This document shows, in pieces, positions 1,027 to 50,240 of a stretch of 64,000 nucleotides of DNA; the stretch's first letter is position 1, and each line of letters opens with the position of its first letter. Below the pieces are notes generated by a model that searched no databases, had not been told where the DNA came from, and was given only the letters and a program-made list of their open reading frames with translations. A program made the position numbers and the translations under genes. The stretch comes from Auanema rhodensis (taxonomy: Eukaryota > Animalia > Nematoda): the NCBI GenBank assembly GCA_964057225.1, contig OZ059894.1, positions 11,470,001 to 11,534,000 on the forward strand, given 5' to 3'.

Positions 1027-1078
1027 CTCTAGCAGATCTAAAGACTTACGTAGTACAGTTGCAATATCGATTTAGCCA
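1..1078 (-). mobile_element. Utopia-type non-LTR retrotransposon, 5' part (cut by window edge), variant beta
   Basis: Nearly identical to 49163-50240; flanked by U2 nt 39-96 at 1079-1136. Confidence 0.93.
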
Positions 1079-1136: not shown

Positions 1137-1924
1137 TATTGAAGTAGATAATGTTTGTCCCGGAGGACTACAATATTAAAATAATTACTGAAGCCCGAAG
1201 GCAGCGAGAAATAGTAAGGATACTACCTGCACTGAGTGCGTCGTATCATAAAAAAAGAGATAGCTAATGGGCAAGTTGAAGAGCTTGAAATTAACAATGA
1301 CGTCACTAGAAGTAAAGTTTTCTATCTGCAGCTGCGGGTAAAGAGGGTCAGCGTAAGCAGAATTCAATTCTACCAACAATTAGTGGGAACATTGAGAGAA
1401 CAGATGAAGGAGGAAATTGTAACTTCAAGTAAAATAGATTATATCTTCAGCTGCGGGTAAAGAGAGTCAGCTTTGTACAGATTACTAGTTTACATAAGAA
1501 GTGGTAACATTTCAAAAAAGGAGCACAACATAAAAAACGAGACTACGGACTATGAGGTAAATGTTATCATTGTCTGGATCGATGATTCGGCATTTGATTG
1601 CAGCTGCGGATTGAGTGGATCAGCTTGCATGGCGTCCGCATTCGACATCAGGGAAAATGATGAGTTTCTTGAGGTCCGGCTCGGCGGGCTGTTATGTCCT
1701 ATTCCCTGTTGATGGTGTTGTTGTCCTTGAGCTTGTTCTTCTTCCCAGAAAAAAAAAAACTGTGAAGCTGAAGAGTCCTATTAAACGTCTTTAAACGCAA
1801 GATTAATAAGAAGCTACTACAGCTAACACAGGACCGCCTCAAGGCCTGGTAGATCAACCAGTGTTGCTTCAATCACCAAGTATTGCGGCCTGGGCCCTTG
1901 GATCAATTCACAACACCAGTATAG
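1137..1924 (-). mobile_element. Non-autonomous U2-targeted retroelement A (788 bp, SINE-like)
   Basis: Same U2 insertion site as Utopia; ends in TTCAATAA; no RT ORF; shares 5' and 3' blocks with 34392-35256. Confidence 0.85.
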
Positions 1925-2003
1925 CAATGGAACACATATCGAAGGTTAATTCGATAAGAACGATTACTACACTTTGATCTTAGCCAAAAGGCCGAGAAGC
2001 GAT
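1925..2003 (-). pseudogene. Interrupted U2 snRNA, nt 1-79
   Basis: U2 match stops at nt 79 and continues into element A. Confidence 0.9.
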
Positions 2004-3911: not shown

Positions 3912-4036
3912 ACCAGTATAGTAATAGAACACATATTGAAGATTAATTCGATAAGAACAATTTATTGACGTAGAGAATGTTTGTTCCGAAAAACTACAAT
4001 ATTAAACTATAAAAGTAACAAAAGCGTAGAGGCAGC
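3912..4036 (-). pseudogene. Decayed element/U2(39-79)/element junction, present in all 20 complete spacers
   Basis: 3922-3962 matches U2 nt 39-79 at 36/41; 3963-4006 matches the element A 3' end at 38/44; 3912-3921 equals the element A 5' end (ACCAGTATAG). Confidence 0.85.
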
Positions 4037-4279: not shown

Positions 4280-4463
4280 TGGGCCGTTCCCGCCAGCAGT
4301 GCAAGAGCGGGTCGACCCGTGAGGTGGAGCTAGCAAGCCAGCATCTACCTCAAGTCTCAAAAATCGGTTAACCTTATTGTGAACCAATGGAACACATATC
4401 GAAGGTTAATTCGATAAGAACGATTACTACACTTTGATCTTAGCCAAAAGGCCGAGAAGCGAT
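4280..4463 (-). ncRNA. U2 snRNA
   Basis: ATCGCTTCTCGGCCTTTTGGCTAAGATCAAAGTGTAGTA, stems IIa/IIb, Sm site ATTTTTG, loop IV TTGCACT. Confidence 0.96.
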
Positions 4464-12300: not shown

Positions 12301-13106
12301 TGTTGGCCCTCCAAAGCTTCTGGATCTTCATCGCCTGGGTTTTTTGGTCTTCCTCAGGTTGTGTGTGTGGTCGGCGCCTTTGTCGGAAGTTGGGAACTTT
12401 GATCATAATGTCAAGAGACTTTCTGATTGTGTCTACCAACTCTTCCAGGACCTGCTCGAGCTCACTTTTGCATACTACCTTTTTAATTCTATCCACCCAA
12501 ATATTTTCAGAGTTTCTATTCGGATCAGGGTCGGCAAAAGATGGTTCTGTACTCGGAACCCTGATCTCGTTGAATATTTCACTCTCTCGCGGAAGGGGGG
12601 AAACTTCGGCCTCTGGGGACAAGTCCAGAATTGGGGCCTCAAACAAGCGTACCGTTGATGGAGATCCTTGTTCCTGTCCACTGGATGATGTTTCCTCCAT
12701 TGTACGCTCCTCCACGGGCGGGGTGGTCGTCCTTGTGCCTGGTGGGCGGGTGTTCCTGATCCTCCGCAATATAGGGCGGGAACTGGGCTCTCTCGGAGAT
12801 AGAGGTGAGATCACCACAGTTTCCTCTATGATGCGGAGGCATCCTTCAGCTTTTTTCTGATGGCTTTTAACGGCCTTCAGATTGCTGGTGAGGCCACAGG
12901 CACGGCACTCAAATTCTACTCCGACCTCATGTTCTCTCCGAAGATGGCGGACGAGACCATTGTGGTCTGAGTAGGATCGCGGAATAGGAGCGCAGATTGA
13001 ACAAGAAAAAGGGCTCTGAAGAGGCACCTTTAGCTTGTAAAGCCCTTGCTCCATCTCTAGCAGATCTAAAGACTTACGTAGTACAGTTGCAATATCGATT
13101 TAGCCA
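9379..13106 (-). mobile_element. Full-length Utopia-type (U2-targeting, RLE) non-LTR retrotransposon, variant alpha, 3728 bp
   Basis: Single RT-RLE ORF inserted in U2 in the same orientation; 52-nt unique 5' UTR; about 400-nt U-rich 3' UTR ending AATAAACCATT. Confidence 0.94.
9776..13054 (-). CDS. Retrotransposon protein: zinc fingers + reverse transcriptase + CCHC knuckle + restriction-like endonuclease (1092 aa)
   Basis: C2H2 finger CSIC...HLRREH; RT motifs APGADG, NWRPIAL, LDLANAF, QGSPLSP, YADD, GGLGL; CRRC...ETAAHVLGHC; RHN; RPDIV...VDV...KERKY. Confidence 0.97.
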   Translation of the reverse strand: MEQGLYKLKVPLQSPFSCSICAPIPRSYSDHNGLVRHLRREHEVGVEFECRACGLTSNLKAVKSHQKKAEGCLRIIEETVVISPLSPREPSSRPILRRIRNTRPPGTRTTTPPVEERTMEETSSSGQEQGSPSTVRLFEAPILDLSPEAEVSPLPRESEIFNEIRVPSTEPSFADPDPNRNSENIWVDRIKKVVCKSELEQVLEELVDTIRKSLDIMIKVPNFRQRRRPHTQPEEDQKTQAMKIQKLWRANKKKAFRQLLGEQSETCTIPSADVEKHFLSVHSSQGPALPITVTRPDLPTSTDPLEGVFTPLEVWERIRRCSDTAPGADGLRYSHWKKFDQGGHILAAIFNTVHKLGHIPFSWKESTTVLIHKKGDKADINNWRPIALSCTIGKTYSACLTHRLLTWARAEKRLSPSQKGFVAKAGCMEHNFLLQSTIADAKRKREKIAIAWLDLANAFGSLPHETLLDVLRWSGMAEASISRVRALYTDASTRIQTGSGLTSTIPVHAGVLQGSPLSPILFNLAIEPLIKTILETSTGYKLHNHNIAVLAYADDLALVSSSSEDLQKMLDAASNAANFTGLTFKPAKCATLTIDKGKISTASYMLQSCFLPALSKFDSYSHLGIPTGMHLHKSAVPTVNIMSQHLEKIDKSLLAEWQKADAVRTFLMPCLNFHMTNGHVPKSKLVAFDKELKRCARRWMHYPPNASAEPIYLPTNYGGLGLSRLQHLSDVCEVTHAYQLLKSSDLVVADIAHQDSIKVASKRIKRQASNDETAAYYNGSVDGIFDTETSDVSSIWTRVRVAMRQLKKLINANWTCLESGLELNLNNQLLTPSLCHRSLRRALWLKDLRILLQKPDQGKVFDVTMLNKASNHFMAKGDFIRFADWRFIHKARLNTLQLNGCRRHGEGNKQCRRCSYPNETAAHVLGHCHFHTRAIQLRHNNIVDRLIKALPEPKNGEVYTNQPLPGINSTLRPDIVVVDHDAKHCSIVDVTVSYENRRQAMIAARMIKERKYADIASQYQCLGYKTSVEAYVVGMLGTMDPLNVQALRSLKISSHYNRLMEKLVVADTIKWARNIYVEHVSGVRQYEEEIIH

Positions 13107-13202
13107 TTAACCTTATTGTGAACCAATGGAACACATATCGAAGGTTAATTCGATAAGAACGATTACTACACTTTGATCTTAGCCAAAAGGCCGAGAAGCG
13201 AT
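13107..13202 (-). pseudogene. Interrupted U2 snRNA, nt 1-96
   Basis: U2 match stops at nt 96 and continues into the element 5' UTR. Confidence 0.92.
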
Positions 13203-30520: not shown

Positions 30521-31702
30521 ACAGTAAAAAGTCCAATCAAGAGAGAAATTTTTTCAACACATAGTTGTTTTTTTTTTAAATATCATTGTTTTTCCTCATA
30601 ACTCGGTTTAAACTCGTTCTAACCCGTTGAAATACGTCTAGAAAGTCTTTATAACATGCATATGTATGATAGAACTTCATATTTATTGTAATAGAAAATT
30701 TTATTTTCAGACGTCTTGGTTAACAATGATATGTTTTACCCCCTTATAATTTTTATCATAATGTTCCTTATACGGAACGCTCAATGAAACTTGCTTCCAG
30801 AAAAATTTCTTTCTATTTTTTCTTCATATGTACGTAGATACTATAGAGAACTATGATAGAAAACTTTAACATTCACGAAATCATCATTTCTCATTACGCT
30901 ACGGAGGTTTAAAAAGCTGTGTTTTACCTTATAATAGACCGGAAAACCCTTGTGTTAAAACTGGACCGTTTTTACACATATAAAAATGTCCCGTATTCGG
31001 GACCCTAATGTAACTTTTGATTCCCTATATTTTTTTTCATGAAATTTACAATCTACTGTAGAAAGAAGAATTATTTTTATAAAAACTGTAAATTTTTGAA
31101 AAATGAAAACAAAACGAAAACAAAAACAACTTTTTTTTGAACATTTTCTCACACAAGGGTCCCCCCTTACCTACTTTTTTTCTCATTACTCGTTTCAACC
31201 TCATCCGATCACTCTGCAAACATGTTTAATCGTTCTAACTTGTTGAAATACGTCTTAAAAGTCTAAACAACATGCATATGCATAATAGAAACCACCCGAA
31301 TAGGCCCCCACGCACTAAACGAGATATATACATTACCAGTATAGTAATAGAACACATATTGAAGATTAATTCGATAAGAACAATTTATTGACGTAGAGAA
31401 TGTTTGTTCCGAAAAACTACAATATTAAACTATAAAAGTAACAAAAGCGTAGAGGCAGCAAAGACATGAATAAACATAAATGTAAATACAGAATTACCAG
31501 GTAGTACATAAGTATGACAAAAAATTATAAGAAAGCCATGAAAATAGAAGGTTTGTGAACAAATGAGAGGTACATCTTTGATCGTATAGTCATTTCTAAA
31601 CCGTTCGTATGCTGCAGCATCGTCATAAGCGTCACTCAAGTTGAATTTCCATGTGTACTACACGATTTTCATTCTTATTGTTACATTCTTTCCCTGAGGG
31701 AA

Positions 31703-31886
31703 TGGGCCGTTCCCGCCAGCAGTGCAAGAGCGGGTCGACCCGTGAGGTGGAGCTAGCAAGCCAGCATCTACCTCAAGTCTCAAAAATCGGTTAACCTTAT
31801 TGTGAACTAATGGAACACATATCGAAGGTTAATTCGATAAGAACGATTACTACACTTTGATCTTAGCCAAAAGGCCGAGAAGCGAT
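31703..31886 (-). ncRNA. U2 snRNA (G79A variant)
   Basis: Intact copy with C>T at 31808 on the + strand. Confidence 0.94.
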
Positions 31887-34391: not shown

Positions 34392-35256
34392 TATTGAAGT
34401 AGGAAATGTTTTGCCCCGTAGGACTACAAGTAAATATTATCTAGCACAAGGCTATTAGAGAATGATAAGATACTACCTGCACTAAGTGCGTCGCATCGTA
34501 AAGGGAAAAAAAATTAAACAATGGGAGTTTAACAGCATGAAATTGAGAGAAAAGACATATCCGAGTGTGAATAAAATTACGGGTGAACGGAACATGGAGT
34601 ACGAGAGACATACAAAACGAGACTAAGTGAAAAGAAAAAGTCTTGTATCACGTTCATGAAGGTTCGACGGATCCGGTAAGAAGCTGCGGGTTCAGAAGGT
34701 CAGCTTTCATCTCGTAGTCGTGGCGCATCAGGAATTTGTGAAGCTTTCCGGCTTTGCAGACGGCTGTATTGGTCCTCGTAGGATGGTGGAAGATGTTGTC
34801 GCTTAGTGATGTTACACATAAAGATATGCAAAAATAGAACAATTCAAAGAAAAAGAGCACAATTAAAACGAGATTTGGAGAGAAGAGAAGTCTTATATCA
34901 CTTTCGATGGTTCGGAAGCTCCAGTCTGCTGCTGCGGTTTAGGGGGTGCAACTGGCATGTCGGAGGCGTAGCACATCATAGGTCAAGCTTGCTGGACTCC
35001 CGGCTCGGCTGGTGGCTGTGAGTTTTCCTTGTGCTTGTTCTCGGTGGTGGTCCCTGGGCTGTCTCTTCACCAAAAATTACTATACTAATTGCACATTTCA
35101 TTTAAACGACCCATTTCAGAAGCTTTAAGAGGAAAAGCTACAATTAGCATAGGACCGCCTCAAGGCCTGGTGGATCATTCAATTTAGTTTCAATCGCCAA
35201 GTATAGCGGCCTGGGCCCTTGGGTCAATTCACTGAACCAGTGTAGTATCGATTGTT
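34392..35256 (-). mobile_element. Non-autonomous U2-targeted retroelement B (865 bp, SINE-like)
   Basis: Same U2 site; U2 nt 39-79 present on both sides; terminal blocks homologous to element A; no RT ORF. Confidence 0.87.
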
Positions 35257-45700: not shown

Positions 45701-46472
45701 CTGGGTTTTTTGGTCTTCCTCAGGTTGTGTGTGTGGTCGGCGCCTTTGTCGGAAGTTGGGAACTTTGATCATAATGTCAAGAGACTTTCTGATTGTGTCT
45801 ACCAACTCTTCCAGGACCTGCTCGAGCTCACTTTTGCACACTACCTTTTTAATTCTATCCACCCAAATATTTTCAGAGTTTCTATTCGGATCAGGGTCGG
45901 CAAAAGATGGTTCTGTACTCGGAACCCTGATCTCGTTGAATATTTCACTCTCTCGCGGAAGGGGGGAAACTTCGGCCTCTGGGGACAAGTCCAGAATTGG
46001 GGCCTCAAACAAGCGTACCGTTGATGGAGATCCTTGTTCCTGTCCACTGGATGATGTTTCCTCCATTGTACGCTCCTCCACGGGCGGGGTGGTCGTCCTT
46101 GTGCCTGGTGGGCGGGTGTTCCTGATCCTCCGCAATATAGGGCGGGAACTGGGCTCTCTCGGAGATAGAGGTGAGATCACCACAGTTTCCTCTATGATGC
46201 GGAGGCATCCTTCAGCTTTTTTCTGATGGCTTTTAACGGCCTTCAGATTGCTGGTGAGGCCACAGGCACGGCACTCAAATTCTACTCCGACCTCATGTTC
46301 TCTCCGAAGATGGCGGACGAGACCATTGTGGTCTGAGTAGGATCGCGGAATAGGAGCGCAGATTGAACAAGAAAAAGGGCTCTGAAGAGGCACCTTTAGC
46401 TTGTAAAGCCCTTGCTCCATCTCTAGCAGATCTAAAGACTTACGTAGTACAGTTGCAATATCGATTTAGCCA
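42745..46472 (-). mobile_element. Full-length Utopia-type retrotransposon, variant alpha, 3728 bp
   Basis: Almost identical to 9379-13106. Confidence 0.94.
43142..46420 (-). CDS. Zinc finger-RT-RLE retrotransposon protein (1092 aa)
   Basis: Same protein as 9776-13054. Confidence 0.97.
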   Translation of the reverse strand: MEQGLYKLKVPLQSPFSCSICAPIPRSYSDHNGLVRHLRREHEVGVEFECRACGLTSNLKAVKSHQKKAEGCLRIIEETVVISPLSPREPSSRPILRRIRNTRPPGTRTTTPPVEERTMEETSSSGQEQGSPSTVRLFEAPILDLSPEAEVSPLPRESEIFNEIRVPSTEPSFADPDPNRNSENIWVDRIKKVVCKSELEQVLEELVDTIRKSLDIMIKVPNFRQRRRPHTQPEEDQKTQAMKIQKLWRANKKKAFRQLLGEQSETCTIPSADVEKHFLSVHSSQGPALPITVTRPDLPTSTDPLEGVFTPLEVWERIRRCSDTAPGADGLRYSHWKKFDQGGHILAAIFNTVHKLGHIPFSWKESTTVLIHKKGDKADINNWRPIALSCTIGKTYSACLTHRLLTWARAEKRLSPSQKGFVAKAGCMEHNFLLQSTIADAKRKREKIAIAWLDLANAFGSLPHETLLDVLRWSGMAEASISRVRALYTDASTRIQTGSGLTSTIPVHAGVLQGSPLSPILFNLAIEPLIKTILETSTGYKLHNHNIAVLAYADDLALVSSSSEDLQKMLDAASNAANFTGLTFKPAKCATLTIDKGKISTASYMLQSCFLPALSKFDSYSHLGIPTGMHLHKSAVPTVNIMSQHLEKIDKSLLAEWQKADAVRTFLMPCLNFHMTNGHVPKSKLVAFDKELKRCARRWMHYPPNASAEPIYLPTNYGGLGLSRLQHLSDVCEVTHAYQLLKSSDLVVADIAHQDSIKVASKRIKRQASNDETAAYYNGSVDGIFDTETSDVSSIWTRVRVAMRQLKKLINANWTCLESGLELNLNNQLLTPSLCHRSLRRALWLKDLRILLQKPDQGKVFDVTMLNKASNHFMAKGDFIRFADWRFIHKARLNTLQLNGCRRHGEGNKQCRRCSYPNETAAHVLGHCHFHTRAIQLRHNNIVDRLIKALPEPKNGEVYTNQPLPGINSTLRPDIVVVDHDAKHCSIVDVTVSYENRRQAMIAARMIKERKYADIASQYQCLGYKTSVEAYVVGMLGTMDPLNVQALRSLKISSHYNRLMEKLVVADTIKWARNIYVEHVSGVRQYEEEIIH

Positions 46473-49500: not shown

Positions 49501-50240
49501 GTGGTCGGCGCCTTTGTCGGAAGTTGGGAACTTTGATCATAATGTCAAGAGACTTTCTGATTGCGTCTACCAACTCTTCCAGGACCTGCTCGAGCTCACT
49601 TTTGCACACAACCTTTTTAATTCTATCCACCCAAGTATTTTCAGAGTTTCTATTCGGATCAGGGTCGGCAAAAAATGGTTCTGTACTCGAAACCCTGATC
49701 TCGTTGAATATTTCACTCTCTCGCGGAAGGGGGGAAACTTCGGCCTCTGGGGACAAGTCCAGAATTGGGGCCTCAAACAAGCGTACCGTTGATGGAGATC
49801 CTTGTTCCTGTCCACTGGATGATGTTTCCTCCATTGTACGCTCCTCCACGGGCGGGGTGGTCGTCCTTGTGCCTGGTGGGCGGGTGTTCCTGATCCTCCG
49901 CAATATAGGGCGGGAACTGGGCTCTCTCGGAGATAGAGGTGAGATCACCACAGTTTCCTCTATGATGCGGAGGCATCCTTCAGCTTTTTTCTGATGGCTT
50001 TTAACGGCCTTCAGATTGCTGGTGAGGCCACAGGCACGGCACTCAAATTCTACTCCGACCTCATGTTCTCTCCGAAGATGGCGGACGAGACCATTGTGGT
50101 CTGAGTAGGATCGCGGAATAGGAGCGCAGATTGAACAAGAAAAAGGGCTCTGAAGAGGCACCTTTAGCTTGTAAAGCCCTTGCTCCATCTCTAGCAGATC
50201 TAAAGACTTACGTAGTACAGTTGCAATATCGATTTAGCCA
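46531..50240 (-). mobile_element. Full-length Utopia-type retrotransposon, variant beta, 3710 bp
   Basis: Head-to-tail with the previous copy; 3' UTR indels and coding substitutions relative to alpha. Confidence 0.94.
46910..50188 (-). CDS. Zinc finger-RT-RLE retrotransposon protein (1092 aa)
   Basis: Intact YADD, CCHC and PD..D..K motifs; scattered substitutions versus alpha. Confidence 0.97.
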   Translation of the reverse strand: MEQGLYKLKVPLQSPFSCSICAPIPRSYSDHNGLVRHLRREHEVGVEFECRACGLTSNLKAVKSHQKKAEGCLRIIEETVVISPLSPREPSSRPILRRIRNTRPPGTRTTTPPVEERTMEETSSSGQEQGSPSTVRLFEAPILDLSPEAEVSPLPRESEIFNEIRVSSTEPFFADPDPNRNSENTWVDRIKKVVCKSELEQVLEELVDAIRKSLDIMIKVPNFRQRRRPHTQPEEDQKTQAMKLQKLWRANKKKAFRQLLGEQSETCTIPSAEVEKHFLSVHSSQGPALPITVTRPDLPASTDPLEGVFTPLEVWERIRRCSDTAPGADGLRYSHWKKFDQGGHILAAIFNTVHKLGHIPFSWKESTTVLIHKKGDKADINNWRPIALSCTIGKTYSACLTHRLLTWARAEKRLSPSQKGFVAKAGCMEHNFMLQSTIADAKRKREKIAIAWLDLANAFGSLPHETLLDVLRWSGVAEASISRVRALYTDASTRIQTGSGLTSTIPVHAGVLQGSPLSPILFNLAIEPLIKTILESSTGYKLHNHNIAVLAYADDLALVSSSSEDLQKMLDAASNAANFTGLTFKPAKCATLTIDKGKISTASYMLQSSSLPALSKFDSYSHLGIPTGMHLHKSAVPTVNIMSQHLEKIDKSLLAEWQKADAVRTFLMPCLNFHMTNGHVPKSKLVAFDKELKRCARRWMHYPPNASAEPIYLPTNYGGLGLSRLQHLSDVCEVTHAYQLLKSSDLVVADIAHQDSKKVASKRIKRQASNDETAAYYNGSVDGIFDTETSDVSSIWTRVRVAMRQLKKLINANWTCLESGLELNLNNQLLTPSLCHRSLRRALWLKDLRILLQKPDQGKVFDVTMLNKASNHFMAKGDFIRFADWRFIHKARLNTLQLNGCRRHGEGNKQCRRCSYSNETAAHVLGHCHSHTRAIQLRHNNIVDRLIKALPEPKNGEVYTNQPLPGINSTLRPDIVVVDHDAKHCSIVDVTVSYENRRQAMIAARMIKERKYADIASQYQCLGYKTSVEAYVVGMLGTMDPLNGQALRSLKISSHYNRLMEKLVVADTIKWARNIYVEHVSGVRQYEEEIIN

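What the first reader, a model, noticed from the sequence alone, without database searches (positions are those of the whole stretch)
13057..13083. Leaders of all element types are antisense to the U2 5' region, including the branch-point recognition sequence and nick site
Seen, on the + strand (antisense in the element RNA). The Utopia 5' UTR reads CTA-gc-AGATC-t-AAAG-acttac-GTAGTA versus U2 nt 21-39 CTAAGATCAAAGTGTAGTA. Element A reads GGCCCTTGGATCAA (1893-1906) and AGTATAGCAAT (1918-1928) versus U2 GGCCTTTTGG, GATCAA and AGTGTAGTAAT; the last gives an 11-bp RNA helix whose two differences are both G-U wobbles. Element B reads GGCCCTTGG (35214-35222) and AGTGTAGTATCG (35239-35250). The spacer relic has AGTATAGTAAT. 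Different primary sequences thus all keep complementarity to GUAGUA. Inference: the U2-element chimeric transcript folds back to mask the branch-site and U6-pairing surfaces so it does not poison splicing. Alternatively, the RNA pairs with the sense DNA strand beside the nick and helps guide targeting or second-strand joining.
Basis: partly seen in the sequence, partly recalled or inferred. Interest (0 to 1): 0.88.

Follow-up and report, generated by a model that had tools for sequence, protein, structure and literature searches.

The report
Anti-U2 tract in Utopia retrotransposon leaders
Jumping genes that live inside U2 snRNA genes of this roundworm, and distant relatives in a scorpion, carry in their leader a short stretch complementary to the start of U2; it looks selected and should pair with the U2 piece at the head of their own RNA, but what that pairing does is untested.

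Summary

- **Utopia in this window.** The 27-nt match alone is weak.
- **Scorpion relatives.** Eight Centruroides Utopia copies, only 43-65% identical in protein, each carry a 13-19-nt (14-16 in most) near-perfect antisense U2 tract 0-8 nt before the start codon. They are the sister clade of the window's element. The window's tract sits at the same place and outscores 99-100% of other 40-nt windows of the element.
- **Elements A and B.** These hold two tandem, diverged inverted copies of U2 nt 1-48. A, B and the spacer relic are one homologous family, not independent cases.
- **Other lineages.** Five other Utopia lineages lack the tract.

My best reading is a conserved anti-U2 box that pairs in cis with the U2 head of the chimeric transcript. 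Its function is unproven: masking, help with integration, or an inherited junction scar. No ribozyme was detected.

First-reader notes elsewhere in this genome record the same theme (s1-422405, -422406, -422424, s1-407165, s1-391384); they are unchecked.

The parts
13057..13097 (-). Utopia anti-U2 tract. All 23 nt of rc(U2 21-43) occur in order, broken by five insertions (10, 3, 2, 1 and 2 nt). It ends 2 nt before the ATG.
13052..13054 (-). Start codon of the 1092-aa Utopia ORF (13054-9776), which has an RT domain, a CCHC finger and an RPD..D..K endonuclease motif.
13107..13202 (-). U2 nt 1-96 head upstream of Utopia. It is the cis pairing partner.
50191..50231 (-). Same tract in the second Utopia copy (head of a tandem pair).
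46423..46463 (-). Same tract in the third Utopia copy, which is preceded only by U2 40-96.
1029..1069 (-). Same tract in the fourth Utopia copy, which runs off the window.
1879..1928 (-). Element A tract T1 plus 4 nt of U2 (76-79). It is antisense to U2 about 11-41.
1825..1878 (-). Element A tract T2, antisense to U2 about 1-43 (local alignment z 5.2).
35200..35256 (-). Element B tract T1. Nt 1-18 match rc(U2 31-48) with one base missing at the nick position, followed by blocks antisense to U2 about 11-30.
35146..35199 (-). Element B tract T2, antisense to U2 about 1-43. Its 5' half has decayed; its 3' half is identical to A's.
3912..3925 (-). Spacer relic: an A-type 5' junction (degenerate U2 40-78, then the start of T1). 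It is fixed in each array unit.

Best explanation
The leaders carry a heritable anti-U2 box, an inverted and partly decayed copy of the U2 5' region. In Utopia it covers nt 21-43. In the non-autonomous elements A and B it is present twice in tandem and covers about nt 1-48.

These elements are transcribed and copied with a U2 head (U2 1-96 or 1-79 here, 1-59 in the scorpion). The box should therefore pair in cis with that head and close the leader into a stem. The stem would bury U2 stem-loop I and the branch-point recognition sequence, and in the autonomous elements it would place the start codon at its foot.

**Shown:** the complementarity, its conservation, and its position.

**Inferred:** that the helix forms in vivo. 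Also inferred is its use, which I take to be keeping the U2-headed RNA from behaving as U2 (snRNP proteins, U6 or branch-site pairing) so that it can serve as mRNA and template. On this view the benefit goes to the element rather than to host splicing.
For: - **Conservation.** Eight scorpion copies with proteins 43-65% identical keep the tract 0-8 nt before the ATG while the flanking leader diverges.
- **Match to host U2.** Six of the eight fit the U2 variant of the one intact scorpion U2 gene fetched.
- **Phylogeny.** The scorpion clade is sister to the window's clade (SH-aLRT 94), and all lineages without the tract fall outside.
- **Window Utopia.** The tract sits at the same position and is an outlier within the element.
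- **A and B.** They keep only a 5' module (83% identity) and a 3' module, and the 5' module consists of the two antisense tracts.
- **Predicted folds.** A/B MFE z is about -3. The scorpion long-range helix has P 0.83-0.995 against 0.02-0.12 for shuffled tracts.
- **Strand asymmetry.** Departures from perfect complementarity are mostly G-U compatible on the sense RNA, and the sense duplex is more stable than the complementary strands in 4 of 5 tracts.
- **U2 head travels with the element.** L005 has a 5'-truncated U2 head (from about nt 17-18) with non-U2 sequence directly upstream. Earlier notes s1-387519 and s1-391243 reached the same conclusion for this genome.
Against: - In this window's Utopia the helix adds no stability over shuffled leaders, and the tract is broken by five insertions.
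- The closest relative with a readable leader, the Diploscapter-like L001, has at most a weak trace.
- Between A and B, the part of T2 facing GUAGUA has decayed freely.
- A stable stem next to the cap and the AUG should hinder scanning rather than help it.
- Stacked copies lack U2 1-38 directly upstream.
- The G-U asymmetry is not significant (about 7 to 2).
Confidence: 0.4

Rival explanations
1. **Integration aid at the DNA level.** The RNA tract pairs with the sense (top) DNA strand of the target U2 gene right beside the bottom-strand nick. Alternatively, its cDNA complement captures the displaced bottom-strand flap. Either way it would help target choice or 5' joining.
For: - The tract starts at or spans the nick position (U2 38-40).
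- In B T1, A/B T2, the Utopia leader and scorpion copy L009:10001, the discontinuity lies exactly at the nick.
- Non-autonomous A/B keep the tract although they have no ORF.
- Most scorpion tracts (5 of 8) are uninterrupted Watson-Crick matches to the host U2 over at least 13-14 nt.
Against: - This gives no reason for the fixed position next to the ATG.
- A/B T2 reaches U2 nt 1-15, far from the nick.
- The tract is absent from five other Utopia lineages that use the same insertion site.
- The intramolecular partner in the same RNA should outcompete duplex DNA.
Confidence: 0.2
2. **Inherited junction scar.** An aberrant 5' joining once placed an inverted piece of the target behind the U2 head. 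Because the junction lies inside the U2-promoted transcript, the piece is copied at every jump. It has no function of its own, at least in the roundworm.
For: - The antisense blocks are colinear, as in an inverted duplication of U2 1-48.
- T1 and T2 share derived features, so they look like a tandem duplication.
- The T2 5' half has decayed independently in A and B.
- The Utopia tract is riddled with insertions.
- For R2, junction aberrations are proposed to be propagated when the RNA includes upstream host sequence (PMC3774820).
Against: - A neutral 14-nt stretch would not survive in eight scorpion copies at 43-65% protein identity.
- The A/B 5' module is conserved while the middle of the elements cannot be aligned.
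Confidence: 0.2
3. **Pairing in trans** with U2 snRNA or nascent U2 RNA. This could recruit or titrate U2 snRNP, retain the RNA in the nucleus, or bring the particle to U2 gene loci.
For: - The tract contains a branch-site-like UACUAC and extends the U2 pairing to 14-19 bp.
- Scorpion leaders also keep a perfect 5' splice-site-like G|GUAAGU.
Against: - The cis partner is present in the same molecule.
- There is no consistent 3' splice site, so this is not a conventional intron.
- No expression data are available.
Confidence: 0.1
4. **Ribozyme P1 strand.** The tract is the P1' strand of a self-cleaving ribozyme that cuts the co-transcript inside U2, as in many R2 elements.
For: In R2, about 7 nt of element sequence pair with upstream 28S RNA over 23 to more than 700 nt to form P1 of an HDV-like ribozyme (PMC3774820).
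Against: - Rfam found no ribozyme at E up to 10 on element B or on the scorpion leader.
- My HDV-like descriptor gave 0 candidates in the window constructs and noise-level hits in the scorpion.
- The ORF starts right after the tract, which leaves no room for the core.
- U2 transcripts start at U2 +1 and need no 5' processing.
Confidence: 0.05

Closest known systems
R2 HDV-like ribozyme whose P1 stem uses upstream 28S rRNA sequence (Eickbush et al. 2013, PMC3774820)
   Same: A site-specific RLE non-LTR element co-transcribed with its host gene. The element's 5' region carries a stretch complementary to host RNA upstream of the insertion site. The pairing can span hundreds of nt. The host sequence on the RNA then shapes the 5' junction.
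   Different: In R2 the pairing is a 7-bp P1 inside a catalytic fold. Here it is 14-19 bp (scorpion) or interrupted over 23-45 nt (roundworm), no catalytic core was detected, it sits directly before the ATG, and the host promoter already sets the 5' end.
Utopia, the U2-targeting RLE non-LTR retrotransposon (Kojima and Jurka 2015, PMC4640811)
   Same: Insertion with U2 resuming at nt 39/40, one ORF with zinc fingers, RT, CCHC and RLE, and tandem insertions in U2 arrays.
   Different: The paper has no occurrence of 'antisense', 'complementary' or 'ribozyme'. It reports TSDs of 0 bp (arthropods) or 20 bp (reptiles). Here 57-58 bp of U2 are repeated for Utopia and 40-41 bp for A/B.
R2 SIDE-type non-autonomous derivatives (Eickbush and Eickbush 2012, PMC3414825)
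   Same: A and B keep only a conserved 5' module and a 3' module and use the autonomous element's site.
   Different: In R2 derivatives the retained 5' module is a ribozyme. Here it is two antisense copies of the host RNA's 5' end.
Intron branch site pairing with the U2 GUAGUA sequence
   Same: The tract includes UACUAC, which pairs with the same U2 nucleotides as a branch site.
   Different: There is no bulged branch adenosine in register, the pairing extends far into the stem-I side of U2, and there is no consistent 3' splice site.

Membership tests
Utopia (U2-specific RLE non-LTR retrotransposon) | 3' junction with U2 resuming at nt 39 (bottom-strand nick 38/39) | tested here: met
   U2 resumes at nt 39/40 after Utopia, A and B; the A residues at the junction make the exact base ambiguous. 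Compared with PMC4640811.
Utopia (U2-specific RLE non-LTR retrotransposon) | Single ORF with reverse transcriptase | tested here: met
   Pfam RVT_1, E 5e-28, in the 1092-aa ORF.
Utopia (U2-specific RLE non-LTR retrotransposon) | C-terminal CCHC finger plus PD-(D/E)xK restriction-like endonuclease | tested here: met
   Motif level only: a CCHC finger at residues 911-928, then RPD at 972-974, a downstream D and K. These columns are nearly invariant in alignment A2.
Utopia (U2-specific RLE non-LTR retrotransposon) | RT phylogeny groups it with other U2-inserted elements | tested here: met
   It clusters with scorpion, spider and metagenome elements flanked by U2, apart from the R2-type outgroup. 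No Repbase reference sequences were available.
HDV-like ribozyme at the 5' junction (R2 type) | Nested P1/P2/P3/P1.1 fold with P1' directly after P3 | tested here: not met
   The descriptor scan gave 0 candidates in the window constructs (shuffles average about 1), and Rfam found no ribozyme hits. The descriptor is my own and is approximate.
Spliceosomal intron in the leader | 5' splice site, branch site and a 3' splice site in order | tested here: not met
   Scorpion leaders have a conserved G|GTAAGT and the tract as a possible branch site, but no consistent AG acceptor before the ATG. The window's GTAAGT..TTTAG is only 12 nt long.

The most novel reading that the evidence does not exclude
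The anti-U2 box acts as a guide. The element RNA, or its cDNA, base-pairs with the U2 gene at the nick and so contributes to site choice or to 5' joining. That would make Utopia a non-LTR retrotransposon with a nucleic-acid-guided integration step, as in group II introns.
Probability: 0.15. Interest if true: 0.9.

Novelty: new variant of a known kind. Interest (0 to 1): 0.62.

Why it matters
Site-specific non-LTR elements are being developed as gene-insertion tools, and how their RNA 5' ends take part in integration is still an open question. A conserved leader tract complementary to the host RNA the element rides on has not, as far as I could find, been described for Utopia. It gives a simple mutate-and-compensate handle to test three things: whether such elements must silence the host-derived head of their RNA, whether they use RNA-DNA pairing at the target, or whether they merely carry a scar. 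It also shows how a retrotransposon can use an snRNA promoter and 5' domain without making a functional-looking snRNA.

Tried and rejected
- **Read laying.** There is therefore no evidence on transcripts or copy variants. The four runs found are small and of unknown type.
- **Ribozymes.** None were found by Rfam or by my own HDV-like descriptor.
- **Cis covariation in L005.** I first read the extra T in L005's U2 head, matched by an extra A in its tract, as a cis compensatory change. I rejected this because an intact scorpion U2 gene (L011, from 15285) has the same T. It shows a match to the host variant, not cis covariation.
- **Leader intron with the tract as branch site.** Rejected because there is no consistent acceptor.
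- **L001 hit.** An antisense hit in L001 at about 980 lies in zinc-finger coding sequence and is spurious.
- **Sense versus reverse-complement fold energies.** Inconclusive at whole-construct level.
- **Other lineages.** The tract was looked for and not found in L003 (which has sense-orientation U2-like repeats instead), L006, L007/L008, turtle L012, spider L013, and metagenome loci L014-L017 and L020.
- **A/B versus Utopia.** They share no significant sequence apart from one 16-mer.

Full report
**Context.** The window is a tandem array on the - strand. Each unit of about 2.1-2.5 kb holds a 190-nt U2 snRNA gene and one or two 5S genes. Exact-match mapping of U2 pieces and reading of the junctions give four interrupted U2 genes.
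- U2 1-79 | element A (1924-1139) | U2 40-96 | Utopia, which runs off the window.
- U2 1-96 | Utopia (13106 to about 9380) | U2 40-190.
- U2 1-79 | element B (35256-34391) | U2 40-190.
- U2 1-96 | Utopia | U2 40-96 | Utopia | U2 40-190.

Utopia has one 1092-aa ORF with an RT domain, a CCHC finger and an RPD..D..K endonuclease motif. U2 resumes at nt 39/40 downstream of every element, which is the site published for Utopia (PMC4640811). A and B have no long ORF. They share only a 5' module (A 1-108 = B 12-119, 83%) and a 3' module (73%). Earlier notes of this scan call the organism a roundworm. My tree places the element next to Diploscapter-like sequences.

The Utopia leader is 52 nt and is identical in all four copies. 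Tested alone it is unconvincing.
- Local alignment to antisense U2: P 0.105.
- Chain alignment: P 0.05, while the sense control reaches P 0.03.
- Duplex energy against U2 1-45: z -0.6.
- Fold of U2(1-96)+leader: -35.4 kcal/mol against -35.0 for shuffled leaders.

GUAGUA does pair with the leader in the predicted ensemble (P 0.97), but shuffled leaders already give 0.59.

- B nt 1-18 is an inverted copy of U2 31-48 (16 of 19 columns), with one base missing at the nick position.
- Blocks antisense to U2 about 11-30 follow it.
- A second tract, T2, is antisense to U2 about 1-43 (A: z 5.2, P 0.001).
- T1 and T2 share derived features such as ACACTGGTT, so they are probably a tandem duplication (P 0.02-0.05).
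- A starts 11 nt into B's sequence, so 4 bp of its 11-bp helix are U2's own nt 76-79.
- The spacer relic is the same junction in fossil form.

A, B and the relic are therefore one family, and the tracts are descended copies of inverted U2 rather than convergent sequences. Folding U2(1-79) plus 110 nt of A or B is about 10 kcal/mol more stable than with shuffled leaders (z -3.0). In that fold U2 1-8, 11-15 and 25-43 are all sequestered.

**Comparative evidence.** I fetched relatives of the Utopia protein together with their flanks. Eight Centruroides copies were examined (L004/L009, L005, L010, L011).
- In each, the leader ends in a near-perfect antisense copy of U2 covering about nt 17-39 (core 25-38, 13-19 nt per copy), placed 0-8 nt before the ATG.
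- Their proteins are only 43-65% identical and the rest of the leader has diverged (alignment A1). The tract is therefore under purifying selection.
- Six of the eight tracts carry an extra A. It matches an extra U in the only intact scorpion U2 gene I fetched (L011, from 15285). So the tract fits a host U2 variant.
- This removed my earlier idea of a cis-specific compensatory change in L005.
- Scorpion copies are stacked. Each is preceded by U2 39-59, and the head of a stack has U2 1-59.
- L005 has a 5'-truncated U2 head with non-U2 sequence directly upstream. This suggests that the head travels with the element RNA.

In a maximum-likelihood tree the scorpion clade is sister to the window's clade (SH-aLRT 94). 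Every lineage without a tract lies outside: L003, L006, L007, turtle and spider. This fits a single origin.

With that prior, I aligned rc(U2 18-39) to the 40 nt before the window's ATG. It outscores all 1452 other 40-nt windows of the element under two scoring schemes, and all but 0.8% under a third. The window's tract is thus best read as a degenerate homologue of the scorpion tract. One caution remains: the nearest relative with a readable leader (L001, Diploscapter-like) shows only a weak trace.

**What it does.** Because the U2 head and the tract lie in one RNA, an intramolecular helix is the default expectation. In three scorpion constructs the roughly 380-nt-range helix is predicted with P 0.83-0.995. 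Tract-shuffled controls give 0.02-0.12. Departures from perfect complementarity in the roundworm tracts are mostly G-U compatible on the sense RNA. The sense duplex is more stable than the complementary strands in 4 of 5 tracts. This is suggestive but not significant.

I therefore favour a cis anti-U2 box that closes the leader onto the U2 head (confidence 0.4). The purpose is inferred. Hiding stem-loop I and the branch-point recognition face would stop the chimeric RNA behaving as U2. I think the beneficiary is more likely the element than host splicing, because chimeric RNAs should be rare next to U2 itself. That last point rests on general knowledge and was not tested. The fixed position next to the AUG is unexplained by masking and may point to a link with translation.

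**Rivals.**
- *Pairing with the target DNA beside the nick* fits the tract's boundary at the nick. It also fits the indels that fall exactly there in four independent tracts, and the retention of the tract in ORF-less A/B. It does not explain the AUG position or the coverage of U2 1-15.
- *A propagated junction scar* fits the colinear inverted-copy anatomy and the decay seen in this genome. It does not fit the scorpion conservation.
- *Trans pairing with U2 snRNP* is possible.
- *An R2-type ribozyme P1* is the closest published analogue (PMC3774820). No ribozyme was found by Rfam or by my descriptor.

**Limits.**
The Rfam scan of the scorpion leader stopped just short of the tract. All U2 and tract comparisons were done in local scripts.
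- No RNA evidence was obtained.
- The same theme was noted by first readers at five other places in this genome; those notes are unchecked.

Noticed in passing
L009 9589-10003, L005 1078-1500, L010, L011: Scorpion Utopia leaders keep a perfect 5' splice-site-like G|GTAAGT about 75 nt after the U2 head. They also keep two strongly conserved blocks (GGCCTGCACGGTTTAAACGCACCGTG and CTTGGTTGGyTGC..GCACCCCAGGGGGC). There is no consistent 3' splice site, so the function is unknown.
   Followed up: partly
L003 1-133: This Utopia relative has sense-orientation U2-like repeats (TCAAAGTGT, three in the 60 nt from the U2 junction plus a related copy just before the ATG) instead of an antisense tract. They may be microhomology footprints of 5' joining.
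   Followed up: partly
L015 366-430; L017 137-260: Distant Utopia-like elements from freshwater metagenomes have duplicated sense U2 pieces at the 5' junction: U2 1-39 followed by U2 2-13 in L015, and a tandem U2 head in L017.
   Followed up: no
window 4418-4433 and every U2 copy: The host U2 reads GTAGTAATCGTTC at the insertion site, where the arthropod U2s fetched here read GTAGTATCTGTTC.
   Followed up: no
window 31697-31886: One U2 copy in the array is a sequence variant: 144.6 bits against 148.4 for the rest, and it lacks the exact 40-79 match.
   Followed up: no
window 1658-1673 (A nt 252-267) and Utopia nt 2468-2483: A perfect 16-nt match is the only sequence shared between A and the Utopia body.
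   Followed up: no
window 13066-13083: The insertion that splits the Utopia tract is GTAAGT, a 5' splice-site consensus, and it is followed by CTTTAG. At 12 nt this is too short for an intron and may be coincidence.
   Followed up: no
window, array units: Units carry either one 5S gene (about 2.1 kb, for example around 18583, 20702 and 27751) or two (about 2.47 kb).
   Followed up: no
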